Shown here piece by piece: positions 9,801 through 62,800 of a DNA stretch of 64,000 nucleotides. Every line of letters starts with the position of its first letter. Within the stretch, counting starts at the first letter, position 1. The notes beneath the pieces were generated by a model. The model was not told where the DNA came from. It was given only the letters and a program-made list of their open reading frames with translations, and did no database searches. The stretch comes from Octopus bimaculoides. Its lineage: Eukaryota. The DNA is taken from contig NC_068987.1 in the NCBI RefSeq assembly GCF_001194135.2, forward strand, positions 64,817,162-64,881,161, given 5' to 3'. A program made the position numbers and the translations under genes.

Positions 9801-9854
9801 TGCAAATAAAAGCCTGTCCTGAACTCGCTTGTAAAACGGAATGACCTACTAGTT

Positions 9855-10241: not shown

Positions 10242-10318
10242 AGTTTATAACTGAAGGAAAGTTTTGTATTTATCAGTGTTTATCGGGCAGTGATGTGCTT
10301 TTATATGGACATCACAGC

Positions 10319-10349
<31 letters not shown>

Positions 10350-10596
10350 TACAGTATGTGCGCGCGCACGTAGATATATTGTAGTATGGTGTTCTTCAAT
10401 CAGAAATATGGATGTCACAAGGAATACTAGATTTATTATTAATTACAATTTCAGAGCGGCGAGCTGGCAGAACTGTTAGCATGCCGGGTAAAATCAACTT
10501 TGCCTTTCACCCTTTCAGGGTCGTTGAAATCAGTACTAGCTCCTTCAAAACTTCAAGCGTTGTGCTCTATAGTAGATATGATTATTAATTACAATT

Positions 10597-19490: not shown

Positions 19491-20269
19491 TTTGTGTACA
19501 AATTCTACTAATTTTGTTTTACTTTCCATCTTTCAGAGGGTTTGTTGTTTAGCTCCAAGTCAGCCTGAATAGAGGAGAATTGCATTGAACAGTGTGTTCT
19601 TTGTATAAAATGGTAGAGTAAAATTTGGGGGAAATTTAGCTGCTATATTTTGCAGGTTAAATAACCACATAGAGGCTCTTTTGTTAGTTTGTAAAGTTGT
19701 TGCTTAGACCCAGATCAACCTTGAGTAAACAGACCCATGATAAAAGGCATTCCATCCATAGTCCCCAATTTTTTGGAGTATCTAGGACTTCACTATTCAT
19801 GTGTATCTAGGACAACACTATTCATTGTGTCCCTTGTTTTTCACAGGTGGTAGGGTGTCATTTGAGAGATTTGGCTCCACAGATCACAGGTTGTCCATGA
19901 CTGGTGGAGATGCTCCCTCATTGGCTTGTAGCTTGAAGAGTCATGGAAATGTATATCAGTAATATACAGTAGCTAGTTTGATGGATTATGCCTCTCCTTT
20001 ACAAAAATAGTTAGACTTTGTTGTCTCATAAAAAAAAAATTCTTATTGGTTACCTTTTAAAGTTGACACAGTAGAAAGTAAAACTAAATATATATTATCT
20101 ACATTTCCAGCAAAGTATAAAGTTCAGTATCTTGTTTGATTATCATGTAATACTGATCCTGCATTCAAAACTTGCTGTAATTCACTTAATATTTCATTCT
20201 TGCTTCCCTATACTATGTCAGTTGACCATTCTACTTTTATTTGATAGCGTAATGATAATAATAATAATA

Positions 20270-20910
20270 ATGATTTCAGATTTTGGTACAAGGCCAGTAA
20301 GTTCAGGGGAGGGGGTAAGTTGTTTACATCGACCCTAGTAATCGACTGCTACTTATTTAATTGACCTTGAAAGGATGAAAGGCAAAGTTGACCTTGGTGG
20401 AATTTGAACTCAGAACGTAAAGATGAATGATATGCTGTTAGTAATAATAATAATTATTTCTGAAATTTGTGGGGAGGGGACTAGTTGATTATATCAGCCA
20501 CATTACACAACTAATACTTATTTCATTGACCGTGGAAGGATGAAAGGTAAACTCAACCTCAGTGGGATTTGAACTGGGAATGTTATGATGAATGAAACAC
20601 TGCTAAACATTTTGTCCAGCATGCTAACAATTCTGCCAGTTTGCAACCTTTAATAATAATGCTTTCTATTATAGGCCCAAGGCCTGACTTCCTTTCTACT
20701 ATAGGCACAAGGCCTGAAATTTTGGGGAGGGGGCTAGTTGATTACATTGACATCAGTGCTCAGCTTATACTTATTTTATCATGCCCAAAATGATGAAAGG
20801 CAAAGTCAACGTCAGCAGAATTTGAATTCAGAACTTAAAGATGGACGAAATGTCGTGAAGTATTTTATCCAGCAGGCTAATGATTCTACCTTTTGCTGCC
20901 TTATTAATAA
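20270..20910 (-). mobile_element. Cluster of 3-4 SINE family A copies separated by (TAA)n
   Basis: Repeated aaggatgaaaggcaaagttgacc...gaatttgaactcagaac units at ~20370, ~20540 and ~20790, with taataataa spacers. Confidence 0.85.
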
Positions 20911-21332
20911 TAATAATTGAAATAAAAAAAGGCTGTAGCAAAATGTGGGTCAGCTGACTGGTGTTGCGGACACAACTTGCTGGAAACTCATTTTGTCTGT
21001 ATTGTCATTTTTCAACATAACTGTGTAATTATTTCAAAAAAGAATAATACTTTGGCACCTTTTCAAGCTATACTTGAAATCATTTGGCAATGAGGAAGGC
21101 CTCTATGTGATCTCTTTAGCTGCCAGCAAAAAAGAAATCAGTGAAAATCTTGAATTTTCACCCTATCATTAGAAAAAGAAGAAAAAGGACATATTGAATA
21201 GTGTAGATACACAGGATAACCTCAGAATATCTTTGACCATTGGTCAACTCTATAACAGCTGACCAGTGGTTAAATGACAACATGTAAAGCCTTCTGGGGT
21301 TTTTTTGTTTGTCTAGTCTTAACCAATTTCCT

Positions 21333-38909: not shown

Positions 38910-40324
38910 CACACATACACACGAGTTTCTTTCAGTTTCTGTCTACCAAATCTACTCACATGTCTTTGGTCAGTCCAAGGCTATAGTAGAAGACACTTGC
39001 CCAAAGTTCCACCATTGGGACTGAACCCAGGACCATGTGGTTGGGAAGCAAGCTTCTTACCACACACCCAATCCTGTGCTTATGTTAAAGTTATTTTACT
39101 AAATTTCTTTATTTACAAACTTAGCTGAAACAAAGCCCATGCATTTCAATAGAAATATGGTAGCAAAAGGGTTAACAGCATCCTCAGTTTTTCAAATACC
39201 TTAACCTTAGATTCACACCTGCCCAACTATACCCCAATTATTACCTAATTCAACTGATTATTTTTCAGTTAATAAAAATGTTGTTAAATATTTCATTTAG
39301 TGAGCAAACTTGGTGATGCTACAATGGCTTTTGGTCGTATTCTTGCACCACACTTGAAAGAACAAGGGAAAAAGATTTTACCGAAGTCTATTACAAACAG
39401 CTCAGAGGCAGCTTCTAATTTTGATGCTGCTATTGAAATTGCTTCAAGTGGTATAAAAGGTAGGTGTACAAATTTTGACATGTTTCTCTTTCATAAACGT
39501 AACACATTATGGTTTTATCTTTTACTTGTTTCAGTCATTTGACTGTGGCTATGCTGGGACACTACTTTGAAGGGTTTTAGCTGAACAAATCAACCCCAGG
39601 TTTTCTTTTTCTTTTTAAGCTCGGCCCCTTTTTGCTGATCTGCTTAATTATGGGGATGCAAACATACCAGCACTGGTCGTCAAGTGGTGGAGGGGAGGAA
39701 CACAGGCATAAAAACACATGCACACAGATGTATATATCTCTTTTAGTTGTTTCAGTTACTTGACTGCGGTCATGCTGGAGCACCACCTTTAGTCAAGAAA
39801 ATTGATCCCGGGACTTATTCTTTGTAAGCCTAGTACTTATTCTATCGCACTCTTTTGCCGAACCGCTAAGTGAAGGGGACATAAACACACCAGCATCAGT
39901 TGTCAAGCAATGCTAGGGGGACAAACACAGACACACTAACATACACACACACACACACACATATATATTTACATATATATGATGGGCTTCTTTAAGTTTC
40001 CATCTGCTAAATCCACTCACAAGGCTTTGGTTAGCCTGAGGCTATAGTAGAAGACACTTGTCCAAGATGCCACACAGTGGGACTGAACCAGGAACCATGT
40101 GGTTGATAAGCAAGCTACTTACCACACAGCCACTCCTATATATCATCATCATCATCATCATCATCATCGTTTAACGTCCGCTTTCCATGCTAGCATGGGT
40201 TGGACGATTTGACTGAGGACTGGTGAAACCGGATGGCAACACCAAGCTCCAATCTGATTTGGCAGAGTTTCTACAGCTGGATGCCCTTCCTAACGCCAAC
40301 CACTCAGAGAGTGTATATATATAT

Positions 40325-40384
<60 letters not shown>

Positions 40385-40652
40385 NNNNNNNNNNNNNNNN
40401 NNNNNNNNNNNNNNNNNNNNNNNNNNNNNNNNNNNNNNNNNNNNNNNNNNNNNNNNNNNNNNNNNNNNNNNNNNNNNNNNNNNNNNNNNNNNNNNNNNNN
40501 NNNNNNNNNNNNNNNNNNNNNNNNNNNNNNNNNNNNNNNNNNNNNNNNNNNNNNNNNNNNNNNNNNNNNNNNNNNNNNNNNNNNNNNNNNNNNNNNNNNN
40601 NNNNNNNNNNNNNNNNNNNNNNNNNNNNNNNNNNNNNNNNNNNNNNNNNNNN

Positions 40653-40692
<40 letters not shown>

Positions 40693-43600
40693 ATACACAT
40701 GACAGGCTTATTTCAGTTTCCATCTACCAAATCCACTCACAAGGCTTTGGTCCACTCAAAGCTATAGTAGTGAGACTGAACCTGGAACTATGTGGTTGGT
40801 AAGCAAGCTTCTTACCACACAGCCACGCCTGTGTCTTTAGCAAATTTTGTTTTTAATATTTAATATGAAGCAAAATGTATGTTTGATTAATAAATAAGTT
40901 AGATTACTGATTACATGGTAATCAGTACAGATTTTATCAAGGTTTATCTTAGTTTTCCTTAACTAAAAACAAGTTCTATTCTTTTCTTTCTCACTTGAGT
41001 TATTAATCAGTTACTCAATTGAGTCATTAATGAATTATTTTAGCAAAATACATCCTAATAATTTAAATTTTCTATACTATAACTCAGTACTGCAAGCAAT
41101 CTATAATCATTGAAGGTTTCACTGGTTTGTAGTATTGAATTCAAGTTCTTCTATAAGTTGATCTTGGTTAGAGTTTCCAACCTTGAGGTTTCAATTGTTT
41201 GCCTAACTGAACTTCTTTGCTTATTGAATTAGCATATAATTGGTTGAGTATTTTATAGATGTGTACCTTTTAATATAATTCTCGGGTGCAATCAGCATGT
41301 GCCATTTTAATTACAGGTACAATCCATTTGGCAAGGTTCTACATGGTTACTCACTACCCAGGTCAACTTGAGGCTGTAGAAAATAGCACTTGCTTAAGTG
41401 TTCAGCAGTGGGATTGAACATGAGACCTTGTGTTTACAAAATGAACTTCTTAACCCATTCAGCTATAGTATGCCTGCCAAGTACTCTTATAGGCTTATAT
41501 ATATATAGTAATAACAAATCACTTCACGACTCAGGAGTCCAGAGTTTTGTTGTTGAACCTGGGTTCTGGGTGTTATTATTGCTGTTACATTGTCTTGTTT
41601 GCAACAGTTCGTCACATTATGGTCATCACATATTATGGTCATCACAAGCAATGACAGTCCTTTTATTTGTTCTGGAATTTCACTCTTCACTAGAATTTTC
41701 TTTTCATTGCATTTTTCTGGCATACACTTCAACATAATATATAAATGTAAACATTCAAACGTCATCACTATCTTTCCAAATCCTACTGCATTTCACATGG
41801 AATTTTCAGTCCTCTAATGTCATCTTGGTGTATAAGTCAACCTATCTTTATTTGGATCTGAAAAATGTGGATGGTACAACTTCCAAGAGTTTCTCTGTTT
41901 CTTTCTCTGTACTTTTGTTCCTCTTTTCCCCATCTTTCTTTCTCTCAACCAGATTACTGTTCTTGATTCCCTTCTCTTGATTATTTCAGGTTTTAGTACT
42001 GTCTACATAGGCTTAGAGGCTGCAGCTAAATTCCTTGCCAGAGGCCTTGCTAATGAGACTGTCCACATTGTAAATCACAAGTAAGTTCAATATTGATTTT
42101 ACAATATGTGTCACAATTTTGTATTCTTATTATTTGACAATGTATAAATATCACAATACCTGTTACCTTAAGGCAAGAAGGTAAATATTTTTTTTATAAC
42201 GGTGTAATCTTATAATGTCTGGAGCACAATTTTCAAGGGTTTAGTGAAATATTCCGACTCCAGTATTTATTTTTTAAGTTCACTACTTATTCTGACAGTC
42301 TCTTTTACTGAACTGCTAAGTTATGAGAACCTAAACAAACCAACACTGGTTGTTAAGCAATGGAGAATGGAAATGTGTTTACAGATACACACACATACAC
42401 TCATATACAATGGGCTTCTGCACAGTTTCCATCTAACAAGTTCACTCACAAAGCATTGGTCAACCCACTATGGTAGAAGACACTTGCCCAAGGTTCTGTG
42501 CAGTTGGATTGAACCCGATATCATGTGGTTACAAAACAGGCTTCTTAACTACACAGCAATGTCTGTGCCTATCAGTATTTATTTTTGCTAGCTTCAGTCA
42601 TTGGACTGTTGCCATGCTGGGGTATTACCTTCAATAGTTCTGTCGACCCCAATATTTATTTCCCATCTGCTACATATATTAACAATTTCTATGTATTGAG
42701 CTGCAAAGTTACAAATCTTACATGAAGGGATGCAGCTCAACTTACTGGTTTATACCAGTATACATAAACCCAAACACACACACACACACTGCACCAATGC
42801 ACCACCACTACCACCATCATCATCCATTTGTTTTTCCATACTTCTGTGAGTTGAATGGGACTTCTCCACTCTTTCCACTTATTATAGTCCCTTGTCATGT
42901 CCTTCTTGAGGTTGGGCATCTCAAGAATAAGTTTCACCACTTCTTCCATGTCTTTCTCAACCTTCCTCTTCTGCAGATTCCTTCAAACTTGGTTTATTTG
43001 GCATTTCTTTACCCAAAAGTCTCCCTTCATACATGTCACATGTCCAAAACAGCACACTCTTCCCTTGCATTCTATTACTGATTCCCTTTATGCTCTGCTT
43101 TTCTTTCAGCTTATTTGTACTCCATCATTCATACACATTAACGTTGCACATCCAGAGGTGCATGCTTGTTCTGTTTCTTTCCAGCCTTTCCTCTTTCTCT
43201 GCATTCAATGCCCATGTCTCGCTATCCTACAAAATATCACTTTTTGTACTCAGACATCATACAGTCTTTCATTCATTTAGGGTGAGGCTCCTTTGTTAGA
43301 TCACAATGAAAATAATGAAAGTAGTACATTTTAATATATCATACTTGGGCCTGGACAGCAGCTTGGCAACAATATCTCATCATCATCATCATCATCGTCT
43401 TAACGTCCGCTTTCCATGCTAGCATGGGTTGGACGATTTGACTGAGGACTGGTGAAACCAGATGGCTACACCAGGCTCCAATCTGATTTGGCAGAATTTC
43501 TACAGCTGGATGCCTTTCCTAACGCCAACCACTCTGAGAGTNNNNNNNNNNTCTACAGCTGGATGCCTTTCCTAACGCCAACCACTCTGAGAGTGTAGTG

Positions 43601-44374
43601 GGTGCTTTTACGTGTCACCCGCATGAAGGCTAGTCAGGCGGTACTGGCAACGGCCACGCTCAAAATGGTGTATTTTATGTGCCACCCGCACAAGAGCCAG
43701 TCCAGGGGCCTGAATATAAATCGAAAACTCAAGTCACTTTTCCATGATTTTGTAGATATTAAGAGTATTGCATATCTTGATAAGATTATTGGAAATATGG
43801 AAGCATGGCATATGTTGTGTGGAGAGTCCTTCAGTTTGAAAGTTGTTCCTATAAAACAAAGGGAGGGATTATGTGCTAGTTAAGAAGTATATAAATTGTT
43901 GTTGTGGACCCTCTACCTCCCCCCAAAAAACAATGCATTTGAATGAAATTACTTTGTGATATTTGTTCCAACTGAGTTGCTCAAATGCTCTTGTCGTAAC
44001 CATTGACACTATTGTTCACAAAAAATTACAAAATAAAACAAAGTGTCACCTGATTGCTTTGTTAAATATTAAGAGTTTTATCAAAACTAATTGTGTTTTA
44101 ATTTTGTGTTTCTTTTTATTCTTTGACCAGGTATGGAACTGATATGGCAAAAACAACAGAGAACACGTTATATTCAGTTGGCAACGTTGCTATGACAACT
44201 AATAATGTAACTAACTTTGGTGCAAAAGCCCTTGCCAAAAGAGTGGTGAAGGATGCTGGTAAAGCTGTCATCATAGAACACAGTGACAAACCCTTGAGCA
44301 ATCCAGGGTCAGACACTGATAGTGATGCTAAGTCACCATCCCATGAGACAACCAAAAAGTCACCACTTGAGTAG
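30391..44374 (+). CDS. SPART: Spartin (Troyer syndrome protein homolog), 6 coding exons, 540 aa: join(30391..31126,35517..35717,36869..37060,39301..39459,41990..42080,44131..44374)
   Basis: Exon lengths 736+201+192+159+91+244=1623 nt. All introns are GT-AG and phases are compatible (1,1,1,1,2), with no internal stop. The translation shows an N-terminal MIT-like helical domain, PPSY, the spartin-typical LQVGEWLYPL...YIFPD and FEDLL segments, and a senescence domain (AWGLGKGAE...GFSTVYIGLEAAAK...KYGTD). Confidence 0.95.
35517..35717 (+). CDS. SPART: Spartin coding exon 2
   Basis: Acceptor tgttttttttag, reads (G)CSVGLILPKSLSPEEKKEFEDLL...STKVAKGIEK, donor G|gtttgg. An in-phase alternative donor gtatag lies 12 nt upstream at 35706. 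Confidence 0.9.
36320..36826 (-). mobile_element. Truncated Ty3/gypsy 5' end: LTR (36826..36522), PBS-like TGGCGA (36519..36514), start of Q-rich gag-like ORF (ATG 36454/36451)
   Basis: On the minus strand the LTR starts TGTTGTG and ends CACAATA (decayed CACAACA), contains TATAAATA, is followed after 2 nt by TGGCGATTAGG, then MEDLLASIIQLQKQQEQQQ...LLELYVKK. Confidence 0.75.
36869..37060 (+). CDS. SPART: Spartin coding exon 3 (senescence domain start)
   Basis: Acceptor attctttcag, reads (V)AELIAWGLGKGAEHG...AVRVSGYA, donor gtaagt at 37061. Confidence 0.95.
37743..38630 (+). mobile_element. hAT DNA transposon 5' fragment (BED-like zinc finger plus first catalytic D)
   Basis: Terminus aagggttgcca, then WLCEVPSDQSKTHCRYCRC...SHFEAKKH, then CDHLIKLCK...LHCAKCANIVRNVLAPYF and FSLLLDEFNDIS (hAT LLLDESxD motif). 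Confidence 0.8.
39301..39459 (+). CDS. SPART: Spartin coding exon 4
   Basis: Acceptor tttcatttag, reads (L)SKLGDATMAFGRILAPHLKEQGKK...IASSGIK, donor gtaggt at 39460. Confidence 0.95.
41990..42080 (+). CDS. SPART: Spartin coding exon 5
   Basis: Acceptor ttatttcag, reads (G)FSTVYIGLEAAAKFLARGLANETVHIVNH(K), donor gtaagt at 42081. Confidence 0.95.
42810..43290 (-). mobile_element. RTE-clade LINE 3' ORF fragment
   Basis: DSETWALNAEKEERLERNRTSMHLWMCNV...STNKLKEK and EEVVKLILEMPNLKKDMTRDYNKW match the RTE RT C terminus. Confidence 0.8.
44131..44374 (+). CDS. SPART: Spartin coding exon 6 (last, with stop)
   Basis: Acceptor ttctttgaccag, reads (K)YGTDMAKTTENTLYSVGNVAMTTNNVTNFGAKALAKRVVKDAGKAVI...KSPLE, TAG at 44372..44374. 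Confidence 0.95.
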
Positions 44375-48999: not shown

Positions 49000-51325
49000 N
49001 NNNNNNNNNNNNNNNNNNNNNNNNNNNNNNNNNNNNNNNNNNNNNNNNNNNNNNNNNNNNNNNNNNNNNNNNNNNNNNNNNNNNNNNNNNNNNNNNNNNN
49101 NNNNNNNNNNNNNNNNNNNNNNNNNNNNNNNNNNNNNNNNNNNNNNNNNNNNNNNNNNNNNNNNNNNNNNNNNNNNNNNNNNNNNNNNNNNNNNNNNNNN
49201 NNNNNNNNNNNNNNNNNNNNNNNNNNNNNNNNNNNNNNNNNNNNNNNNNNNNNNNNNNNNNNNNNNNNNNNNNNNNNNNNNNNNNNNNNNNNNNNNNNNN
49301 NNNNNNNNNNNNNNNNNNNNNNNNNNNNNNNNNNNNNNNNNNNNNNNNNNNNNNNNNNNNNNNNNNNNNNNNNNNNNNNNNNNNNNNNNNNNNNNNNNNN
49401 NNNNNNNNNNNNNNNNNNNNNNNNNNNNNNNNNNNNNNNNNNNNNNNNNNNNNNNNNNNNNNNNNNNNNNNNNNNNNNNNNNNNNNNNNNNNNNNNNNNN
49501 NNNNNNNNNNNNNNNNNNNNNNNNNNNNNNNNNNNNNNNNNNNNNNNNNNNNNNNNNNNNNNNNNNNNNNNNNNNNNNNNNNNNNNNNNNNNNNNNNNNN
49601 NNNNNNNNNNNNNNNNNNNNNNNNNNNNNNNNNNNNNNNNNNNNNNNNNNNNNNNNNNNNNNNNNNNNNNNNNNNNNNNNNNNNNNNNNNNNNNNNNNNN
49701 NNNNNNNNNNNNNNNNNNNNNNNNNNNNNNNNNNNNNNNNNNNNNNNNNNNNNNNNNNNNNNNNNNNNNNNNNNNNNNNNNNNNNNNNNNNNNNNNNNNN
49801 NNNNNNNNNNNNNNNNNNNNNNNNNNNNNNNNNNNNNNNNNNNNNNNNNTATATATATATAATATGTATGTGTGTATATATTATAATGTATGTATACATG
49901 AATGTAGATGCACATACGTGTCTGACTGTCTATCTATATATTTATAAACACATGCATACACATAATATTCCCCATCTGTCTGCACATACACACACACACA
50001 CACACACACATGCATATTCTCTCTGTTTCAATTAGTACATAGTCAAAATTGATCAATCATTTCAAATTTAGAGGTTTATAATGCCTTCTATTCTAATTTC
50101 ATTTTCCTACATTTGAAAAATATGGGTTTACATTTTTTGCTATGTGGTGCGAAACATTACCATCTGCATGTGCATGCGTGTGTACATGCACACACATACA
50201 CACACACAAAAGCATGTGTATTTATTGACACAAATACACAAGTCCCTATATAAAGACTGCCAGATGCTAGATTTATTTTTTACCTTAGCACTTACACTCC
50301 TACTGCAGAAACTCGTTGTCCCTTCTTAATAGAACAGTTTCATTTTCCTCTCATCTCCAAATTGACTTCAAGCATTTTTTTTTTTTTTTTTAAACAAATT
50401 GACAAAATTTATTTTCTAGCAATACTTGTTCTGGCCCTTTATGCTCTGAGTTTAAGTTCTGCTAAGATCAACTTTACATTTCAACCTCTCTCAGGTCAAT
50501 GAAATAAAGTATCAATCAAGTACAGGGGTTGATGGCATTGATTAATCCCATCCCCTCAAAAATTGCTGGCCTTGTACCTGAATTAGAAATAATCATTATT
50601 ATTATCTTGGCCTTTGATATTGTCCTCCATGTCTTGAGCCCTTGTGGCCAATAAAAGAAATCAGTATTATTATTATTATTATTATTGTTAAGCTGGTAAG
50701 AATTATTAGCATACTGGGCAGAATGCTTGGTGGTTTTTTCCTCTAGCTCTTTATACTGAGTTCAAATGCCACCAAGGTTAACTTTGCTTTTCATCTTTAG
50801 AGGTCAATGGAATGAGTACCAGTTGAGCACTGGGGTCATTGTAATCACTCCCCTTTTCAAAATTGCTGGCATTGTGTCAAAATTAGAAACCATTATTATT
50901 ATTATTATTATTATCATTATTATTATTATTATGGCAATGAAATGCAGAATCGTCTCTTCTAAGTTCAAATTCTACCAAAGTCAACTCTGCTTTTTATCTT
51001 TTTGAGATCAATAAAACAAAATACCGGTCAAGTATTAATTAATGTTGATGCAATTGAGACTAACTTCCTCTCCTTAAAATTCCTGGCTTTGTGCCAAAAT
51101 TTGAAAGAATTTTTTTTTATTTATTTGTGATTGTAGTGGATGGCAGAATTGAAAGAAACTCAGAACAAATGCTTTGCATTATTTGTTCTGGCACTTTTAT
51201 TTTCTGAGTTCATCCTTTAGAGGTTGATAAAATAAAGTAGCAGTGAAGTGCAGAGTTTATTGTAAAAACAACAAACCTTCTTTCCCCCAAGTTGCTGGCC
51301 TTATATCTGAGTTAGATTAAAACTA

Positions 51326-51401
<76 letters not shown>

Positions 51402-51408
51402 TATTATT
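51326..51408. repeat. (ATT)n microsatellite
   Basis: Long, nearly pure ttatta run read directly. Confidence 0.95.
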
Positions 51409-51649
51409 TTCTTTAAGGCAGTGAGCTGGCAGAATTGTTAGCACACTGGGTGAAATACTTAGCAGTATTTTGTCTGTCTTTATGTTGTTCAAATTCCACC
51501 GAGGTTGACTTTGCCTTTCATCCTTTCGAGGTTGATAAATTAAGTACCAGTTGCGTACTGAGGTCGATCTAATTGACTGCCCTCCCCACTAAAAAAAATT
51601 TCAGGCTTTGTACCTATAGTAGGAAGGATTATTTATTATTTTTATTTAT

Positions 51650-51898
51650 CATCATCATCATCATCATCATCATTATGCTAGTACATGCTAATTTAGATAG
51701 CAGGTAGTTTATCTTGAGGTTTGGTGACAACAAGTCTCCTCAAATCTCAAGAAATTTTGTTAGGCTTCTTGCAGAATACAGGATGGTACTCTTCTGCAGG
51801 TCAACAATGTGAGCTTCAATTCCAATTTCTTTTAAACTTTTAGGCAGCATTTTGGGTGTTGTACCAAGTGCACCTATTACTACGGGAATAATTGTTGT
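51650..51898 (-). mobile_element. R4/Dong-like non-LTR retrotransposon 3' end (RLE C terminus, short 3' UTR, (TGA/TAA)n tail)
   Basis: TTIIPVVIGALGTTPKMLPKSLKEIGIEAHIVDLQKSTILYSARSLTKFLEI* matches the recalled IPxVIGALG...LQK...RILRKVL end of R4-clade ORFs. Confidence 0.75.
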
Positions 51899-53109
51899 TA
51901 GGGCAAAATGCTTAGTGGCATTTTGCCTGTCGCTACATTCTGAGTTCCAATTTTGCCTTTCATCCTTTTGGCATTGATTAAATAAGTACCAGTTACACAT
52001 TAGGGTCAACGTAATTAACTTAATCCCCTTCCCCAAGCTGCCCTTGTGACAAAAATTTGAAATTATCATCATCATCATTATTATTATTCTGGTGGTGGTG
52101 GTGGTGGTAGATTGATGGAATCATTAAAGTATCAGACAAAATGCCTTGTGGTATTTTTTCCAACTCTTTATGTTTTGAGCTCAAATCTCTCCAAAGTTAA
52201 TTTTGCCTTTCATCTTTTTGGGGGCTCAATTAAATAAAGTTACCATTCAATAAATTAAATAACGTTACCACTCAAGTACTGGAGTTAGCTCTATTAACTA
52301 TCACTCCACTCCCTTGAATGCCTATGTTACGAAAAAAAGTTATTATTGTTGTCTTTTACTAAAAGAAGCAGATAGCAGAATTGGTAGAGCATCAGACTAA
52401 ATGCCTTATTTAGTATTTGTGTCCTTTTATATTTTTGTGTTCAAATCGCACTGAGAATGACTTTGTTTTCCATTCTTCAGAGATTGCTTGTGTAGATACC
52501 AGTTTAGTACTGGGGTCAATTTAATAGATTACACCCCTCTCTCAAAATTTGTTTCCTCTTACCTATTTAAGAAGTCATTATTATTGTTTCTGTAGTTGTT
52601 GTAGAGGTGGTGATGGCAGTTAGTTTTTTTGCAGAAACGGAAGATCCTTTAACTAAATGCCTTATACAGTTTAATGTCTTCTTCCTGTATCCTCAATTGG
52701 AAGCCAGTTTGGGGTTGACTTTGCCTTTCAGACTTTAAGAAGGGTCGATAAAATAACTCCCAATAATATACTAGGGTTCATTTCATTCATTCATTCAAGT
52801 TATTCATTCATTCAATTATAATGACTCCCATATGAAGAAAAAAAAAAAAAAGTCCTATGTCCAATAAAAATATTTTATTGGAGTAAATATTCTATTCTGT
52901 AGAAGAGGAAATTCCTGGCCTTCAAGAATCTGTTAGATTTTCAAAACATTGAAAAATTCACCTTATTTGGTCAATTTTGGACAGTGCATCTTTTTTCTTT
53001 TTCAGCATTTCTGCATTTGCATTCAGATCTCTTCAGCTAGTCTTTTTTTTTTCTCTCAATTATTTTGTCTCATCAATTTTTTCACTTTGGTTACTTATTA
53101 ATAAGAGAG

Positions 53110-53370
53110 TTCAATGTCAAAGAATCTGCTAGGATTAGCTGCCAAATTCCCCTCAACTGATTCACACCCTACCCTCTCATTAAAAAGAAAAAAAGGATCA
53201 TATTGGATTATATGAGCCTAGATATGAATATGATGTATCTATCACCAAAAAAGATAAATAAGGAAAAAAAAAAAAATGTGTTGGAAGGTTATGGCTTGAA
53301 TGCTTCGATCATAGGTCTGCTTGAACAGAACTGACCTGGAGCTAAAGAGCAACAACAACAGTCAATAAGC
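53110..53370 (+). repeat. Unclassified interspersed repeat family D (other copies ~4520..4940, 7400..7600, 19500..19860, 21050..21280, 37440..37630, 44690..44890)
   Basis: Shared blocks ctagaaatagcagccaaatctc, cacattggataatgtagtcctag and tttgatcataggtctgct...ctgacctggggctaaac. Confidence 0.65.
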
Positions 53371-56300
53371 TTTGTAGTATGTCCTCTCCTCAACTCATAC
53401 ATATTCTTTTCTACTCTAGGCACAAGGCCCAATATTTTTGGGGAAGGAGTCAGTTGATTAGATTGACTCCAGTACACAACTGGTATTTAATTTATCGACC
53501 CCGAAAGGATGAAAGGCAAAGTCGACCATGGCGGAATTTGAACTCAGAACGTAAAGACAAACGTAATACCACTCAGCATTTCGCTTGGCGTGTTAATGTT
53601 TCTACTAGCTCGCTGCCTTACATATTGATGTAATAATAAGAATTTGCTTGGTTTCTCCTGCTGCTTTATTTATTTCTTTTCATTCCTCAATGAGTCAGGC
53701 AGCCATCTCGGTAATCCATATATTCTGTTTTTGAATTATTTCCTAAACTCTGTCTCCTGTCTGGTGGTTTTTGTATTAAAAAAAAATTATTCAAAATCTG
53801 AGAACAACTTTTTGTTGACTTCTAAATTCATTTCATTTGTCTGGTTGTATATAAGAGCAATTTTGTTATTGTTGCTGTTGTGAGTTGCGGATTGGCAGAA
53901 TCGTTAGAGTGTCTGGCAAAATGTTCCAGTTCTGAGTTCAAATATCAGTGAAGTCAACCTTGCCTTTCATCTTTTCAGGTTGATAAAATAAAGTACCAGT
54001 CAAGTACTGAGGTCTGTGGCATGGACAAACCTCCTCCCTTCAACATTGCTTGCCTTATGTCTAAATCACAAACAATGGCAGCAAGCTGGCAGAGTTGTTA
54101 GAGCTTCAGGAAAAAGGCTTTGTGGTATTTGTTCCAACCCTTTACATTCTGGGTTCAGATCCTACCAAGGTCAACTTTACCTTTCATCTCTCTGTACCAG
54201 TCAAGTATTGGTACCCGTAGTATCAACTAATCCTCTACCCTCAAAATTTCAGGCCTTGTGCCTATAGTAGAAAGGATTATTGTTATTATTATTATTATTA
54301 TTAGGGTTGTGAGCTGGCAGAAGCATTAGAATGCTGGACAAAATGCTTAGCGGCATTTCGTCTGTCTTTATGTTCTGAGTTCAGATTCTGTCAAGGTTGA
54401 CTTTGCCTTTCATCCCTTCAGAGTTAGTTAAATAAGTACCAGTTGAGCACTGGGGTCAGTGTAATTGACTAACTCCTTTCCCCAAAATTTCAGGCCTTGT
54501 GCCTATAGCAGAAAGGATTATTATTATTATTATTGATAAGACAGCAAACTGGCAGAATAGTTAGCATGTGGGACAAAATGCTTAGCAGCAGTTTGTCTGT
54601 CTTTATATTCTGAGTTTGAATTTCGCCAAGGTTGATTTTGCCTGTCATCATTTTGGGGTCAATAAAATAAGTACCAGCTGGGTACTAGGGTCGATGTAAC
54701 TGACTGTCTCTCTACTATAGGCTTTGTGCCGATAGTAAAAAGGATTATTATTATTGTTATTATTGATAAGGTGGTGAGCTGGCAGAATTGATTGCATGCC
54801 AGGTGAAATACTTAGTGGTAATTCATCTGTCACTATGTTCTGAGTTCAAATTCCGCTGATGTCAACTTTGCCTTTCGGGATCAATAAGTTAAGTACCAGT
54901 GAAACACTGGGGTTGTTGTAATCGACTAGTCTCCTCTCTGCAAATAGCTGCCCTTGTGGCAAAATTTGAAACCATTATTATTATTATTGATGTTGTTGAA
55001 GGCAGCAAGCTGGTAGAATTGTTAACATGCTAGGCGAAATGCTTAGTGGTATTTCATCTGTCGCTACATTCTGAGTTCAAATTCTGCCGAGGTCAACTTT
55101 GCCTTTCATCATTTTGGGGTCAATAAATTAAGTACCAGTTGAGTACTGGGGTTGATGTAATCGACAATCCCCCCTCCACTCCAAGTTCAGGCCTTGTGCC
55201 TATAGTAGAAAGGATTATTGATGTTGTTATTGCAGGGCAGTGGATTCACAGAATCATTAGAGGGTTGGACAAATAAACTTGTGAATTTTAGTTACAGACT
55301 TTTACATTCTAACTTCCAATCCCACTGATGTCTTCCGAAGGTTGATAAAATAAGTACGAGTTAAGTACTGGTACTGATTTGATCATCTTTCAACTAACTC
55401 TGCACACTCGCAACTTTATGGCCTTGTGCCTATACTAGAAATCATCATTATCATTACTATTATATGCATTCTCATTTGTATGGTAGGACACAGCAAATGA
55501 TTGCATTTCAGGACAAATTGATACTAACATTCTTGTGTACCTATATGCCAATATATTTTGTACTGATATAACCTGGTCTTTTTTACCTTAGATCTTTACT
55601 CTTCGAAATAATGCTAGTTGTTTCTAACAAAGTACATTTTATTATTGTTTTTATTTGTTTTCTTTGTTAAAAAGATTTTGTCTTCTAAGTATCCGTTTAA
55701 GTTAACAACCCATCTAAATCTGTTACAGATTTTTCTAAGAGATCCTATATAATTACTGGTATTGCATCTGTCTTCTTTACAGACTATATTATTACAATTT
55801 TTACGATTGAGATCCTGATATTTTACATTTTCTGTTTGCTTGTTTTTGAATTATTATTATTATTATTATTGAGCTGGCAGAATCGTTAGCATACTGGATG
55901 AGATGCTTAGTAGCATTTTTCCAGCTCTTTACATTCTAAGTTCAAATCCCACTGAGGTCAGCTTTGCCTTTCATCCATTCAAGGTTGATAAAATAAAATA
56001 CCAGTCAAGTACTGGGGTTGATGTAATCAACTTGGCTCCTCCCTTAAAAATTTCTGGCCTTGTACAAAATTTGAAACCATTTATTATTATTATCATCATC
56101 ATCATTATTATTATTATTATTATTATCATCATTATTATTAAGACAGCAAGCTGGCAGAATCGTTAGCACACTGGACAAAATGCTTAGAAGCATTTCGTCC
56201 GTCTTTATGTTCTGAGTTCAAATACCACTGAGGTTGACTTTGCCTTTCATCCTTATGGGGTTGATGAAATAAGTACCAGATGAATACTGGGTTTGATGTA

Positions 56301-56649
56301 ATCGACTAGCCCTTCCAGCAAAATTTCAGGCCTTGTGCCTATAATAGAAAGTATTATTATTATTATTGTAATCAACGTAACCCCTCCCCAGAAATTGCTG
56401 TCCTTGTGTCAAAATTTGAAACCATTATTATTATTATTATTATTATTACAGTCACTAACATTCTTTAGGAAGGTATGAATGTCTCTTACTCACATCCATG
56501 TTCTTCCTCAAAAAATTTTAGGCTGTGTGCCTATGTCAGAAACAAGTGATTATTGATCCACTTTTTGCCCACAATAAATATGCAATGTGAACAATATAAA
56601 CAGAGCCAGGTCACTTTGTTACTGATTGGCCTATGTATTAATTCTCTGT

Positions 56650-56776
56650 TTCACACAAACACACACACACATGTATACACACACATACACATGTATATAC
56701 ACACATAAATATATATGTGTATGTATAGATATATATGTATACATATGAATATGTATACATACATATATATATCTAT

Positions 56777-56823
<47 letters not shown>

Positions 56824-57245
56824 CACACACACACACATATATATACACACACACACACACACATAAATATACATACATGGAGCCCTCAGTCCAACCATCC
56901 AACCCATACCAGCATGGAAAGTGGACGTTAAACGACGATGATGATGATGATAGTGATATCTATGTATACATATATATAATTATATATATAATATATATAT
57001 ATATGTCTATGTATACATATATATTTATGTATGTATATATAATATATACTTATATGTCTATGTATGCATATATATATATGTCTATGTATACATATATATA
57101 TTCATACACACATACATTTATATATAGACATATATAAACACATATAAACGTATACACAACACATACATATATTTATATATACACACACACATACATGCAC
57201 ACACATATCTATAAATATATATGTTTGTACATATATATGTATATA
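56650..57245. repeat. Compound (CA)n/(TA)n/(TATG)n low-complexity tract
   Basis: Read directly. Similar tracts lie at 16725..16780, 17825..17872, 27140..27230, 48920..49870 (with gap) and 59720..59900. Confidence 0.95.
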
Positions 57246-57631: not shown

Positions 57632-57679
57632 TATAGATATATGCTTGNNNNNNNNNNNNNNNNNNNNNNCTAATATGTG

Positions 57680-57723: not shown

Positions 57724-57943
57724 TATAGATATATGCTTGCATATATATATACATATACATATATATATGTTTGCATATATATGTTTGAATATATATGTAT
57801 AATTATACATATACATATATATATGTTTGCATATATATGTTNNNNNNNNNNCATCACCATGGTTAAAGGGTCATCAAAATATTGATGATGATGATGGTCT
57901 CTCACACACACACTGTTTGGATTTTATGTGATAGAAATGATTC

Positions 57944-59894: not shown

Positions 59895-62800
59895 ATATAT
59901 GTATTTGGTTCCCTTAATTTGCTAAAGATTCAAATAGCTTTCCTATAATGTTTTAAAATTAAACTTCTTTTGAAGTTTTCAAAGAAAAAAAAATATCAAG
60001 TTTTTTATTTAATTTAAAGCATCTCACTGCTTTTTATAAAAATAATAATTTTTTTCATATTCTTGAATATATGTTGAGCTGGTGAAGTGACTATGTGGTT
60101 CAAGAATTTGGATTATCAATTCATGGACTGTGAGTTCAAATGCCTTTTAGGACCATTTTAAATTTGTTTATGCAAATATATCATTTTCTTGTTTTTAAGC
60201 ACAAGAAATGGCTGTGTGGTTAGGGAGTTGTTTTCACAACCATGTGGTTCCAAGTTTGATCCTCAAGTGCAGCACCTTAAACAAGTATCTTTTACCATTG
60301 TTCTTGGGTTAATCTATTGCTTGTGAATGGAACTTGGTAGAAGGTCATTAGAACTACATGGTTTGGAGTTCAGTCTCACTGCTTTGGGCTAGTGTTCTTT
60401 ATTATAACCACAAGTTGGTTAATACCGTATGAGTGAAATTGATAGATGGAAACAGAAGGAAACCTGTCATATATATGTACATGTGTGCATGCGTGTATGT
60501 ACATGAGTTTGTAATTACCCTTGTATTCACATGTGTGCTGATTGTAAACAAAAGCCTCATTTTTCATGCAGGTGTCGTTTGTTTGCAGCTCTTTTGTAAC
60601 AAAAGAATATCCAGGTTGTTTGTTGTTCAGTAGGCTGGGAGATTGGCAGGTGAAGGTTAGCATCAGGAAAGGGTTTTCTGTTAGAGAAAACTGCTTCAAC
60701 ATAATCTCATTTGACCCCTGCAAGCATAGAAAAGTAGATGTTAAAAGGATGGTGATGCATGCATTGTGAATAAATTTGGTAGATAACAATAAATTTGGTA
60801 GATAGAAACTGTATGAAGCCTGTTATGTGTACATGTCTGTGAGAATTCTTGTGAAGCATGTTGGATTTACTTCACATGAAAAACTTGGTGAGCTTCAAGT
60901 GGTGAGGTTTGTTGTCAATACCCTGTCAGCAAGTTGTCTGCTAGCTTTGTACTTTCCAAGATGTGTGGAATAAGAAATCTCTTAACTGAAAGGAAGGACA
61001 TCCACTTTTAAAATAAGATATAACTCAAAAATATGTATTCAGCTAACTCATGCTAGCATGGAAAAAAGGGACATAAAAAAGTTCAAGAATAGATTAACAG
61101 TCTATGTGTGTGTGTATTTACCACTGTCTATTGGCAAAGGATATTAACACGTGAGGAAACTGAAGAATTAGTTTTTATTCACCAACCTCTTGACATATTT
61201 GCACTGCATCAAATAGACCATGCTGGTGCTATTGTTCACCAATTACTATAGAGAATTAATAATATACATATACTCTAGCCATATGAAAAGGGTACTTATT
61301 GACTTAATCTAATACCTGGGTTAACACAACTATCTGGCTCTTGGGTGTTGAACATTTTGAGCCAGATCTCAATCTGTGAAAGTCATATTTTCCAGTATAC
61401 AAATCAATGTAGTATAACCATTCCAACATCATCTCTATTTTTCCAAATTCGGCTGAATTTTTGGTCCTCTAAGATCATCTTGAATAGGTTAACTTATACA
61501 TTGTGGTGTATAAGTTGATCTGTCTTGTTTTGCTGTAAATTCTGGTCTGAAAAATTTGACTTGTATGTCAGAAAATATGGAAATTCCTTCCTATCAGTCT
61601 AGGTGGCCTTGGAAATGGTCACGGGTGTTGCCCTTCCTCCTCTGATTAAACCAATTATAAAAGTTGTAGGCTATAATTCCTCTATGATTAACCAAAGAAT
61701 GTCCTTTAGTACAGTATTTAGTTGATTTATTTTAGTCACAAACAACAGAGTTGGGCAGTTACGTAATGCAATTCTTCAAACTATCTCACATCAAATCCTA
61801 AATATATGTAAACAAACTAAAATATTTTTGCATTCTAGTTTTCTTGTTCAAATACATGCAGAAGCCTCTGAGCATTCTCAACTTGCTAGAAAAAACAGTA
61901 AAATTCTTTTCAGATCATACCATATCAACTTAATACAGGAAGGACACATTATCAATTGTGGTCCTAAATATACAAAATGATGGGATAGTTAAGGTTGGAA
62001 TGGTTTTGATCAGGTGTTGGACCTTTTGATACAGCCTTCCCAAGACTGCCCTTGGTTCTATAGTCACAAAATTCAATTTTAAAGTGATCTATATGAAAAC
62101 TCTCAAAATTTCATGTAAATTTATGTTCTAAACACCAGGTTAATAATTATTATAATTATTATTTTATTTAATTTTTTATTTTCAAAATTAATTGAAATAA
62201 AGATATTTTGATAGAAATATGGTAACAAAACAGCTAAACAATACTAAAGTACAAGTTTGAGAGAGGGGTAGGAGAAAGGCTGTATGTATTTGTGTAAGAG
62301 CCATGCAAATGATGCATATATCTTCTGTCTCAAATTACTAGTAGTATTTCATGTGAAACAATTTTTTGTCATAAACTTTCATAAACTTAGTATAATTGTT
62401 GACAGGTGTGATGGCATTGGAAGTAGATAGGATTTGTTTCTGGGCCCAAATAACTCAAAAAACAATTACCATCATTCACACATGAAAATGGTCTTACATC
62501 ATAATCATCATCATCATCATCATCATTTAATGTCTGTTTTCCATGCTGGCATGAGTTGAACAGTTTGAAATCTGAAAGGTTGGAGGACTGTGTTGTGCTC
62601 CAATGTCTGCTTTGGCGTGGTTTCTACAGATCGTGCCCTTCCTAAAAGCAACCGCTTTGCAGAGTGTACAGGTTGCTTTTTTTTTTTTGTGGCACCAGCA
62701 CTAGTGAAGCCACCATGTAGCTTACAAGACTAAGATCTCTCTTTGCCGAGTAGGTCTATGGTAGAGGAGGAGGCAGCTTTATGCAAGCTGATGAAAGACT

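What the first reader, a model, noticed from the sequence alone, without database searches (positions are those of the whole stretch)
50410..56560. Self-renewing SINE landing pad: about 20 co-oriented SINEs stacked in (ATT)n tracts
Copies are head-to-tail with a ~220-235-bp period (seven in a row at 53880..55445). Neighbours differ in decay and alternate between two tail types (aaaatttcaggccttgtgcctatagtagaaagg versus aaattgctggccttgtgccaaaatttgaaacc), arguing for serial independent insertions rather than tandem duplication. Each copy ends in (ATT)n and the next starts in it, so every insertion would create the target for the next. The result is a dense block of Pol III-type promoters just downstream of spartin, which could act as an insulator or boundary. 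The single inverted copy (~53400..53620) could pair with its neighbours to give long dsRNA.
Basis: partly seen in the sequence, partly recalled or inferred. Interest (0 to 1): 0.7.

Follow-up and report, generated by a model that had tools for sequence, protein, structure and literature searches.

The report
SINEs stacked in their own tails
A 6-kb stretch downstream of a spartin-like gene holds 22 copies of one short retroposon, 21 of them pointing the same way, because new copies repeatedly landed in the (ATT)n tails of older copies; this is a clear example of a known kind of behaviour, not a new kind of element.

Summary
A profile built from the copies finds 38-41 matches in the 64-kb window. 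Of these, 21 lie in 50410-56560 (20 on +, one on - at 53401-53620), and I read one further 3'-end fragment at 50630-50664. SINE sequence covers 63% of the region against 3.7% outside it (P about 4e-12). The orientation bias has P about 2e-5.

The copies arrived one at a time; they are not a tandem duplication. Adjacent copies are no more alike than any other pair (p-distance 0.315 against 0.314). The tree is star-like and no repeat is longer than one unit. Two discrete 3' tail types are intermixed, and some copies are 5'-truncated.

Tail targeting is shown directly. All 16 (ATT)>=4 tracts in the window touch a SINE in the matching orientation. Copy #16 is flanked by a 15-bp duplication, ATTATTGATGTTGTT, whose 12-mer core occurs nowhere else in the window. 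The tag ATTATTGAT marks four successive junctions. A smaller array of the same build lies on the minus strand at 20264-20917.

Strict alternation of tail types is not seen. The insulator and dsRNA ideas remain untested. The behaviour matches known tail-directed retroposition (Alu self-insertion, (TAA)n-targeting Dong LINEs). I rate it a new member of a known kind, of moderate interest.

The parts
50416..50599 (+). SINE #1, 5'-truncated, old; short ATT/ATC tail
   Evidence: nhmmer (model positions 45-220)
50630..50686 (+). #1b: fragment resembling a SINE 3' end (GAGCCCTTGTGGCCAATAAAAGAAATCAGT) followed by (ATT)7
   Evidence: (family D9); missed by the profile
50689..50932 (+). SINE #2 (tail type B) with a 13-unit ATT tail that runs into #3
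50955..51113 (+). SINE #3 (type B), internally deleted, with a degenerate T-rich tail
51139..51316 (+). SINE #4, old, with an internal deletion that removes the B-box region
51326..51401 (+). (ATT)25, the longest tail tract, between #4 and #5
51414..51633 (+). SINE #5, full length, tail type A
   Evidence: 220 bits
51640..51899 (-). Unrelated minus-strand fragment: the end of an ORF, followed on its own strand by a (GAT)8 tail. It abuts the tail of #5 tail-to-tail and interrupts the array.
   Evidence: family not identified
51899..52069 (+). SINE #6, 5'-truncated, type B variant (TGCC..GACA hairpin)
52103..52315 (+). SINE #7, old
52370..52583 (+). SINE #8, the oldest (JC 0.30)
52629..52791 (+). 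SINE #9, decayed, with no recognisable tail
53401..53620 (-). SINE #10, the single inverted copy; full length, type A; short duplication AATATGT(A) at both ends
   Evidence: duplication read
53884..54075 (+). SINE #11; first unit of the tight run; almost no tail before #12
54075..54303 (+). SINE #12 (type A) with its ATT tail
54302..54534 (+). SINE #13 (type A; youngest in the run, JC 0.10) with (ATT)5 and then GAT
54536..54765 (+). SINE #14 (type A) with its tail; ATTATTGAT on both sides
54766..54997 (+). SINE #15 (type B; compensatory C-G in the 3' hairpin) with its tail; ATTATTGAT on both sides
54983..54997 (+). Left copy of the 15-bp target-site duplication ATTATTGATGTTGTT of #16
54998..55213 (+). 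SINE #16 (type A), inserted between #15 and #17
55214..55228 (+). Right copy of the 15-bp target-site duplication of #16
55234..55450 (+). SINE #17, old (JC 0.33); last unit of the tight run
55850..56081 (+). (ATT)7 followed by SINE #18 (type B, lacking about 10 nt at its 5' end)
56082..56360 (+). ATT/ATC tail of #18 and SINE #19 (type A; least diverged, JC 0.095)
56364..56448 (+). SINE #20: a 67-bp 5'-truncated type B copy sitting inside the ATT tail of #19, followed by its own (ATT)8
56503..56553 (+). SINE #21: a 51-bp 3' fragment, type A
20264..20917 (-). Independent mini-array of four insertions: a full-length type A copy, a 35-bp 3' fragment, a second full-length copy that lacks its tail module, and a 5'-truncated type B copy. 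It is joined and flanked by ATT tracts.
44123..44374 (+). Last coding exon of the upstream spartin-like gene (Senescence domain), in the same orientation as the array

Best explanation
The block is a pile-up of one family of non-coding retroposon (SINE). The unit is about 225 bp. It has a head with Pol III A/B-box-like motifs, a shared body, one of two 3' modules that each keep a small hairpin, and an (ATT)n tail.

New copies were inserted one at a time over a long period by target-primed reverse transcription.
1. The partner enzyme nicks the bottom strand inside an existing (ATT)n tract.
2. The (AUU)n end of the SINE RNA pairs with the nicked strand and primes cDNA synthesis.
3. The second nick falls 7-16 bp downstream.

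Each insertion therefore brings its own ATT tail and also duplicates the ATT-containing target. The number of landing sites grows with each hit, and every newcomer takes the orientation of the tract. That produces head-to-tail, co-oriented arrays of unrelated copies.

Shown here: independence of the copies, orientation, the association between ATT tracts and SINEs, and the target-site duplications. Inferred: Pol III transcription, base-pairing of the tail with the target, and the identity of the partner LINE. A (TAA)n-targeting Dong/R4-type LINE is a candidate only.
For: Independence of the copies:
- Mean p-distance of adjacent copies is 0.315 against 0.314 for all pairs; permutation P = 0.58.
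- The NJ tree has long terminal branches, and the nearest relative of most copies is non-adjacent or lies outside the region.
- No direct-repeat family exceeds one unit.
- Non-CpG JC distance to the consensus ranges from 0.095 to 0.33 with no positional order.
- Two discrete 3' modules, each also found at unlinked loci in the window, are intermixed.
- 5'-truncated copies (#1, #6, #20, #21) are typical of reverse transcription.

Targeting of ATT tracts:
- All 16 perfect (ATT)>=4 tracts in the 64 kb touch a SINE in the matching orientation.
- Sixteen of 38 hits have (ATT)2 within 25 nt upstream, against a 3.1% background (P = 7e-15). This holds for 12 of 15 copies with a complete 5' end.
- ATTGATGTTGTT occurs only twice in the window, immediately on each side of #16.
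- ATTATTGAT marks four successive junctions.
- The truncated copy #20 sits inside the tail of #19.
- The isolated copy at 10455-10587 has a 16-bp duplication, ATTATTAATTACAATT, that starts with ATT repeats.

Replication elsewhere: the same architecture occurs on the opposite strand at 20264-20917.

3' module: the hairpin is kept through compensatory changes (A-U in type A, U-A in type B, and one G-C to C-G), and the covariation score exceeds all 500 shuffles.

Literature:
- Microsatellite-targeting LINEs are known, including (TAA)n-specific Dong in a snail (PMC3812793).
- Dong-R4 has the most recently active LINE insertions in Octopus vulgaris (PMC13282606).
- Alu self-insertions occur in the sense orientation next to A-rich stretches (PMC2836564).
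- Dog SINE duplications begin with A4 and have a mode of 15 bp (PMC11699766).
Against: - No partner LINE with a matching 3' end is in the window.
- About six junctions lack a clean ATT tract, and #11->#12 has almost none.
- Several isolated copies (6193, 35026, 4228) sit in non-ATT sites, so the preference is strong but not absolute.
- Tail homing explains growth within a sub-array. It does not explain why four or five sub-arrays started within 6 kb.
- The GAT in three of the four tagged junctions could be part of the SINE 5' end rather than duplicated target. Only the #16 duplication is unambiguous.
- All evidence comes from one 64-kb window of a gapped draft assembly. No orthologous empty sites or genome-wide counts could be obtained.
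- The window's source organism was not established by any tool. My guess that it is an octopod rests on memory alone.
Confidence: 0.8

Rival explanations
1. Tandem amplification: one SINE plus its tail was duplicated by unequal crossing-over or replication slippage, and the units then diverged. This is how SINE arrays in bivalves and SINE-derived satellites in reptiles have been explained.
For: The 220-235-bp spacing is regular and TRF calls a 235-bp array. SINE tandem arrays attributed to unequal recombination are reported in a bivalve (PMC11481361). The same ATTATTGAT occurs at four junctions, which could also be read as a duplicated junction.
Against: Adjacent units are no closer than random pairs and are not sisters. 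There is no higher-order repeat. Neighbours carry different discrete 3' modules that also occur at unlinked loci. Ages differ up to three-fold between neighbours. Truncated copies lie inside tails.
Confidence: 0.04
2. Passive accumulation: the region is simply a tolerated dumping ground downstream of a gene. The orientation bias then comes from selection against nearby inverted repeats or against one orientation in a transcript, not from sequence-directed integration.
For: SINEs are reported to accumulate near genes in molluscs (PMC11481361). Inverted Alu pairs are depleted in human (PMC3215922). Several sub-arrays nucleated close together, which tail targeting alone does not explain. All copies but one share the orientation of the upstream gene.
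Against: It does not explain 5' ends that abut ATT tracts with base-pair precision, nor the tagged duplications. It does not explain why every ATT tract is tied to a SINE, nor the mirror-image mini-array on the other strand at 20 kb.
Confidence: 0.1
3. Assembly artefact: short-read assembly threaded through (ATT)n tracts and joined SINE copies from different loci.
For: The window is a draft with nine N runs. The 75-bp (ATT)25 tract at 51326-51401 could exceed a k-mer or read-overlap length.
Against: There is no gap inside 50410-56560. Most bridging tracts are only 12-21 bp and lie between copies that differ by 20-35%, so the junctions are uniquely spanned. The matched duplication around #16 would not arise from mis-joining.
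Confidence: 0.03
4. Selected function: the array is retained because its many Pol III/TFIIIC sites act as a chromatin boundary downstream of the spartin-like gene, or because the inverted copy yields dsRNA. This would add to the insertion mechanism rather than replace it.
For: A/B-box-like motifs are present in many copies. The inverted copy can form duplexes of about 190 pairs with sense copies, for example -286 kcal/mol with #16 against -77 for shuffles. tDNA and SINE insulators are known in yeast and mammals (my own knowledge).
Against: The copies decay freely, with non-CpG JC up to 0.33 and the boxes lost in most copies. Only 7-8 of 21 copies keep both boxes at consensus quality, and the consensus boxes themselves are imperfect. 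ARAGORN and Rfam find no tRNA-like gene. No expression, binding or conservation data are available.
Confidence: 0.07

Closest known systems
Alu self-insertion at A-rich stretches and tails (Levy, Schwartz and Ast 2010, PMC2836564); dog Can-SINE integration at sites beginning with A4 (PMC11699766)
   Same: In both, a SINE integrates by target-primed reverse transcription where the target matches its own tail, in the sense orientation. Duplications of about 15 bp start with the tail-like sequence. Pre-existing copies therefore attract new ones.
   Different: Here the tail and target are the trinucleotide repeat (ATT)n, not poly(A). The outcome is a run of up to seven complete units rather than mostly pairs. 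The partner enzyme is unknown.
Microsatellite-targeting non-LTR retrotransposons: Dong at (TAA)n, Kibi at (TC)n, Koshi at (TTC)n, Mino at (AC)n (Kojima and Fujiwara 2004, as reviewed in PMC3812793)
   Same: Both insert into a specific microsatellite in a fixed orientation. (TAA)n is the complementary strand of (ATT)n. Dong is known from a mollusc, and Dong-R4 is the LINE group with the most recent insertions in O. vulgaris (PMC13282606).
   Different: Those are autonomous LINEs, whereas this is a non-autonomous SINE. Specificity here is strong but not absolute. No Dong-like LINE, and no LINE sharing this SINE's 3' end, was found in the window, so the link is a hypothesis.
Tandem-like SINE arrays in bivalves (Scapharca broughtonii, up to 15 units; PMC11481361) and SINE-derived satellites in squamates (PMC10702118)
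   Same: These are also head-to-tail runs of SINE units in a mollusc genome, sometimes mixing families.
   Different: Those arrays were attributed to unequal recombination between target-site duplications. Here the units are unrelated in age and 3' module, and at least one carries its own duplication, so serial insertion is the cause.
Stringent SINE/LINE pairs recognised through a 3' stem-loop plus terminal repeats (eel UnaL2/UnaSINE1; Kajikawa and Okada 2002, cited in PMC4758252)
   Same: Both have a small conserved hairpin a few nucleotides upstream of a terminal short tandem repeat. Here the hairpin is kept through compensatory changes.
   Different: Recognition has not been tested and the LINE is unknown. 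The hairpin has only 4 bp and its folding energy is not distinguishable from shuffles.
Octopus tRNA-derived SINEs OK, OR1 and OR2 (Ohshima and Okada 1994), one of which is classed as a CORE-SINE (PMC4758252, PMC4824008)
   Same: Both are short retroposons with a tRNA-like head and a terminal simple repeat. If the window is from an octopod, as I suspect, they also share the likely host group.
   Different: I could not obtain those sequences. Identity with any named family is therefore open.

Membership tests
SINE (LINE-dependent short retroposon) | Short (80-500 bp), non-coding, many dispersed copies | tested here: met
   The unit is about 225 bp. There are 38-41 hits on both strands across the window. 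All consensus reading frames are broken by stop codons.
SINE (LINE-dependent short retroposon) | Variable-sequence target-site duplications flanking individual copies | tested here: met
   Duplications are 15 bp around #16, 16 bp around 10455-10587, about 14 bp around 35026-35240, and 7-8 bp around #10 and 6193-6410.
SINE (LINE-dependent short retroposon) | 3' terminal simple repeat, and 5'-truncated copies | tested here: met
   (ATT)n tails are present. Truncated copies are #1, #6, #20, #21, 20264 and 20653.
SINE (LINE-dependent short retroposon) | Internal Pol III promoter (A and B boxes) in a head derived from a small RNA | tested here: inconclusive
   TGGCAGAATCG has 2 mismatches to TRGCNNAGTGG. 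GTTCAAATC/T has 0-1 mismatch to GWTCRANNC. ARAGORN finds no tRNA in the window and a tRNA-like fold in the consensus only at the 80% threshold. Rfam gives no tRNA hit at E <= 1.
SINE (LINE-dependent short retroposon) | A partner LINE sharing the 3' end | tested here: not met
   No LINE with this 3' module is in the 64 kb. The only ORF-bearing fragment, at 51740-51899 (-), has a (GAT)n tail and a different 3' end. The rest of the genome could not be searched.
CORE-SINE superfamily (includes octopus OR1/OR2 according to the literature) | A central CORE domain of about 60 bp homologous to that of MIR | tested here: inconclusive
   Local alignment to a MIR consensus recalled from memory matches only the B box (z = -0.1 against shuffles). 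No curated CORE, OR1 or OR2 sequence was available.
Microsatellite-specific retroelement (Dong-type) | Insertions lie within one microsatellite type in a fixed orientation | tested here: met
   Sixteen of 16 (ATT)>=4 tracts are SINE-associated in the matching orientation. Twelve of 15 complete 5' ends have (ATT)2 within 25 nt upstream.
Microsatellite-specific retroelement (Dong-type) | Strict specificity (essentially all copies in the target repeat) | tested here: not met
   Copies at 4228, 6193 and 35026 sit in non-ATT sites and have their own duplications.
Satellite or tandem duplication array | Neighbouring units share ancestry (adjacent units most similar, higher-order repeats, uniform junctions) | tested here: not met
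   Adjacent and all-pair distances are 0.315 and 0.314, P = 0.58, and the tree is star-like. No repeat is longer than one unit. The 3' modules are mixed.
Pol III/TFIIIC-type insulator (tDNA or SINE boundary) | TFIIIC/Pol III occupancy and boundary activity | not testable with these tools
   Only motif presence could be scored. About 7-8 of 21 copies keep both boxes at consensus quality.
Inverted-repeat dsRNA source (like inverted Alu pairs) | Inverted copies close together within one transcript | tested here: inconclusive
   One inverted copy lies 0.3-1.4 kb from the sense copies. Predicted duplexes reach -286 kcal/mol with 188 pairs. Whether the region is transcribed is unknown.

The most novel reading that the evidence does not exclude
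Tail homing with duplication of the target may act as a ratchet: each hit adds one landing site. If so, this SINE family would build co-oriented arrays genome-wide. That would account for the SINE-rich blocks reported near octopus genes, and would give a serial-insertion route from dispersed SINE to satellite-like array. The resulting clusters of Pol III-type boxes could be bound by TFIIIC and act as chromatin boundaries or sources of multi-unit read-through transcripts, because neither the consensus nor the (ATT)n tail contains a T4 terminator.
Probability: 0.12. Interest if true: 0.65.

Novelty: new member of a known kind. Interest (0 to 1): 0.4.

Why it matters
This locus shows, base by base, how a microsatellite-tailed SINE can seed its own clusters. 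The insertion duplicates an ATT-containing target and adds a new ATT tail, so the pad grows with use.

- It offers a mechanistic, non-adaptive explanation for the dense SINE blocks described in octopus genomes.
- It shows that head-to-tail SINE arrays need not come from unequal recombination, the explanation offered for a bivalve.
- It warns that (ATT)n microsatellite markers in such genomes are mostly SINE tails.
- It predicts what the partner LINE should look like: an (ATT)n/(TAA)n-homing element with a matching 3' hairpin.

The functional ideas (boundary, dsRNA) remain open.

Tried and rejected
- Orthologous loci for empty-site tests. A protein search with spartin exon 1 returned only a 1.1-kb Logan contig at 98% identity and distant relatives at 58% identity or less. 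The exon ORF itself is not on record. No comparison was possible.
- More copies from elsewhere. Two scans of metagenome contigs with SINE patterns found nothing. A protein search with the open antisense frame of the SINE consensus found no candidate. A full-text search for five SINE sequence strings found one chance match.
- Naming the family. ARAGORN and Rfam at E <= 1 gave no tRNA or SINE model. The only Rfam hits were sub-threshold miRNA models on CA/TA microsatellite. Alignment to a remembered MIR consensus showed nothing beyond the B box.
- Body subfamilies matching the two tail types. I rejected this: body distances within and between tail types are equal (0.283 against 0.276, P = 0.9).
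- Repeats hidden in the spacers. BLAST of the spacers against the window found only microsatellite matches.
- Identity of the interrupting minus-strand ORF. Pfam gave nothing and PDB sequences gave nothing meaningful. I ran no further search on this side issue.
- The two other ATTATTGAT sites, at 47388 and 47521, are unrelated AT-rich sequence.

Full report
WHAT IS THERE. I built a profile from seven copies read off the sequence and searched the whole window with it. It finds 38 matches, 21 of them inside 50410-56560. Twenty are on the + strand and one is on the - strand at 53401-53620. A second-round profile built from 23 near-complete copies gives 41 matches, with the same 21 in the region. 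One more 3'-end fragment followed by (ATT)7 lies at 50630-50686, making 22 insertions in all. Units start at 53887, 54075, 54302, 54536, 54766, 54998 and 55234, and TRF reports a 235-bp period. SINE sequence covers 63% of the region against 3.7% of the rest of the window (binomial P = 4e-12). Twenty of 21 copies in one orientation gives P = 2e-5. No assembly gap lies inside the region. The block is not one array. It is four or five sub-arrays: #1-#5, #6-#9, #11-#17, #18-#20 and #21. They are separated by DNA that is single-copy within the window and by one unrelated minus-strand fragment at 51640-51899.

THE UNIT. The unit is about 225 bp and begins AAGGCGGCGAGCTGGCAGAATCG once decayed CpGs are restored.
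- Head: it carries an A-box-like TGGCAGAATCG (two mismatches to TRGCNNAGTGG) and a B-box-like GAGTTCAAATYCC.
- Body: this part is common to all copies.
- 3' module: there are two forms. Type A is TTTCAGGCCTTGTGCCTATAGTAGAAAGG and type B is TTGCTGGCCTTGTGCCAAAATTTGAAACC.
- Tail: (ATT)n.

Body distances do not separate the two tail types (0.283 within, 0.276 between; P = 0.9). So they are two 3' modules on one body. Both modules keep a 4-bp hairpin with a CUUGU loop. Its closing pair is A-U in type A and U-A in type B, and the #15 lineage has a G-C to C-G change at the second pair. The covariation score exceeds all 500 shuffles, and the hairpin appears in the predicted folds of all three variants. 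The hairpin is too short for its folding energy to stand out from shuffles. ARAGORN finds no tRNA in the window, and finds a tRNA-like fold in the consensus only at a relaxed threshold. Rfam has no tRNA or SINE match. The tRNA origin is therefore plausible but unproven.

SERIAL INSERTION OR TANDEM DUPLICATION.
- Adjacent copies have a mean p-distance of 0.315 against 0.314 for all pairs (permutation P = 0.58).
- The neighbour-joining tree has long terminal branches.
- The nearest relative of most copies is non-adjacent or outside the region altogether.
- No direct-repeat family is longer than one unit, so there is no higher-order repeat.
- Non-CpG Jukes-Cantor distances to the window consensus run from 0.095 (#19) to 0.33 (#17) with no positional gradient. 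In the tight run they are 0.18, 0.26, 0.10, 0.16, 0.18, 0.125 and 0.33.
- Types A and B are discrete, recur at unlinked loci in the window, and are intermixed. The order in the run is B-like, A, A, A, B, A, A. That is not strict alternation.
- Copies #1, #6, #20 and #21 are 5'-truncated.

Using the calibration quoted in PMC13282606 (JC 0.09 is about 25 My and 0.2 about 56 My), the pile-up would span very roughly 25-90 My. This is a rough inference, because the consensus comes from 23 copies only.

IS THE (ATT)n TAIL THE TARGET?
- Every one of the 16 perfect (ATT)>=4 tracts in the 64 kb touches a SINE copy in the matching orientation. Thirteen are in this region and three are in a minus-strand mini-array at 20264-20917. 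There is no free tract.
- Sixteen of 38 hits have (ATT)2 within 25 nt upstream of their 5' boundary, against a background of 3.1% (P = 7e-15). This holds for 12 of the 15 copies with a complete 5' end.
- Nine junctions are bridged by a perfect (ATT)>=4 tract that runs from one 3' module to the next 5' end.
- The strongest evidence is a tagged duplication. #16 is flanked on both sides by ATTATTGATGTTGTT (54983-54997 and 55214-55228). The 12-mer ATTGATGTTGTT occurs nowhere else in the window.
- The duplication starts with ATT repeats and extends 3' into non-repeat sequence. That geometry is what target-primed reverse transcription predicts when the tail pairs with the nicked target. It parallels poly(A)-tailed SINEs, whose duplications begin with A-runs (PMC11699766, PMC2836564).
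- The shorter tag ATTATTGAT sits at four successive junctions, 13->14, 14->15, 15->16 and 16->17. This fits three successive hits at one spot, each copying the tag. A caveat applies: the GAT could belong to the 5' end of some copies.
- #20 is a 67-bp truncated type B copy lying inside the ATT tail of the type A copy #19.
- Isolated copies have ordinary duplications. The one at 10455-10587, ATTATTAATTACAATT, again starts with ATT repeats.
- The mini-array at 20264-20917 repeats the whole pattern on the other strand. It holds two full-length copies, a 35-bp 3' fragment and a truncated type B copy, all joined and flanked by ATT tracts.

MECHANISM. The best-supported account is tail-directed retroposition that renews its own target. 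Each insertion duplicates the ATT-containing target and adds a new ATT tail, so the landing sites multiply. Orientation is fixed because (ATT)n and its complement (AAT)n differ. Three steps are inferred rather than shown: Pol III transcription of source copies, base-pairing of (AUU)n with the nicked strand, and the partner enzyme. The literature gives a candidate class. Dong elements target (TAA)n, including in a snail (PMC3812793), and Dong-R4 has the most recently active LINE insertions in Octopus vulgaris (PMC13282606). No such LINE, nor any LINE sharing this 3' module, is in the window. The preference is not absolute, since copies at 4228, 6193 and 35026 sit in non-ATT sites. It also does not explain why several sub-arrays started within 6 kb. 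A permissive region downstream of a gene may contribute to that.

RIVALS.
- Tandem duplication by unequal crossing-over has been proposed for SINE arrays in a bivalve (PMC11481361). It is contradicted by every relatedness test above.
- Passive accumulation with selection on orientation cannot explain the base-precise junctions, the tagged duplications or the tie between tracts and SINEs. It may still help to explain the regional density.
- Assembly error is unlikely for the tight run. Its bridging tracts are 12-21 bp and lie between copies 20-35% apart. The (ATT)25 tract at 51326-51401 deserves long-read confirmation.

THE FUNCTIONAL SUGGESTIONS. Only about 7-8 of 21 copies keep both box-like motifs at consensus quality, and the copies decay freely. 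The 'dense block of Pol III promoters' is therefore a sequence resemblance only. The inverted copy #10 could form long imperfect duplexes with sense copies if they were co-transcribed. With #16 the prediction is -286 kcal/mol and 188 pairs, against -77 for shuffles. Whether the region is transcribed is unknown. It begins about 6 kb after the stop codon of the spartin-like gene, which shows a Senescence domain, a homologue with an MIT domain and the same orientation as the array. Neither idea can be tested with sequence alone.

COMPARISON AND NOVELTY. The behaviour belongs to a known kind. Alu self-insertions occur in the sense orientation next to A-rich stretches (PMC2836564). Dog SINEs integrate at sites that begin with A4 and give 15-bp duplications (PMC11699766). 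Several LINE lineages home to microsatellites (PMC3812793). The particular points here are a trinucleotide-tailed SINE, runs of up to seven complete unrelated units, and a tagged duplication that records repeated use of one site. Papers on octopus repeats that I could read describe SINE abundance and clustering near genes but not this architecture (PMC13282606, PMC12988792). I could not test whether the element is one of the named octopus SINEs (OK, OR1, OR2). No tool established the window's source organism, and my impression that it is an octopod rests on memory. I rate the finding a new member of a known kind, of moderate interest.

LIMITS. Everything rests on one 64-kb window of a gapped draft assembly. 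Attempts to obtain orthologous loci or further copies failed. The partner LINE and the source organism were not established by any tool.

Noticed in passing
window 32574-32600, 33078-33104, 56909-56935 (+); 40167-40193, 62523-62549 (-): A second retroposon-like family ends ...CCAGCATGGAAAGYGGACGTTAAACGA followed by a (GAT)n tail. There are at least five copies in the window, and two of them lie 500 bp apart in the same orientation. This is another microsatellite-tailed element in the same genome.
   Followed up: partly
window 51640-51899 (-), with (ATC)8 at 51648-51673 on +: A minus-strand ORF end (...PVVIGALGTTPKMLPKSLKEIGIEAHIVDLQKSTILYSARSLTKFLEI*) is followed on its own strand by (GAT)8. 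It abuts the ATT tail of SINE #5 tail-to-tail. From memory it looks like the C-terminus of a LINE protein, but Pfam and PDB searches gave nothing.
   Followed up: partly
window 52070-52081, 56094-56105, 56127-56132, 55445-55460: Runs of ATC interrupt several ATT tails. (ATC)n is the complement of (GAT)n, so decayed ATT tails could become targets for the (GAT)n-tailed elements in the opposite orientation, as at 51648. This is speculation.
   Followed up: no
3' module of all copies, e.g. window 55183-55196 (#16) and 54950-54963 (#15): A 4-bp hairpin with a CUUGU loop is kept in both tail types through compensatory changes. The closing pair is A-U or U-A, and one lineage has G-C changed to C-G. 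It may be the recognition element for the partner reverse transcriptase.
   Followed up: partly
window 20264-20917 (-): An independent four-insertion mini-array of the same SINE lies on the other strand. It includes a 35-bp 3' fragment placed directly after a complete copy that has no ATT tail of its own.
   Followed up: yes
window 13248-13526 (-): An ORF matches the Mos1/mariner transposase HTH domain (PF17906, E = 3.5e-19). It lies next to an assembly gap at 12854-13218.
   Followed up: no
window 9692-10027 (-) and 9973-10254 (+): Two overlapping ORFs on opposite strands encode nearly the same peptide (RLDPMHVEESTGTEW.EFRNSFLYIRD...). This implies an inverted repeat of some element.
   Followed up: no
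window 56646-56878 and 50157-50224: Sub-threshold Rfam hits to mir-297, mir-466 and mir-3149 fall on (CA)n/(TA)n microsatellite, on both strands. I take them as low-complexity artefacts.
   Followed up: yes
window 6527-6623, 10946-11110, 12854-13218, 24173-24182, 40385-40652, 43542-43551, 49000-49849, 57648-57669, 57842-57851: Nine runs of N (1797 bases in total) show that the window comes from a gapped draft assembly. One 850-base gap lies only 560 bp upstream of the finding.
   Followed up: yes
locus L001 (Logan contig from run SRR11869391): A 1146-bp contig from a public sequencing run encodes spartin exon 1 at 98% amino-acid identity to the window. It probably comes from the same or a sister species. 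It is too short to reach the array.
   Followed up: partly
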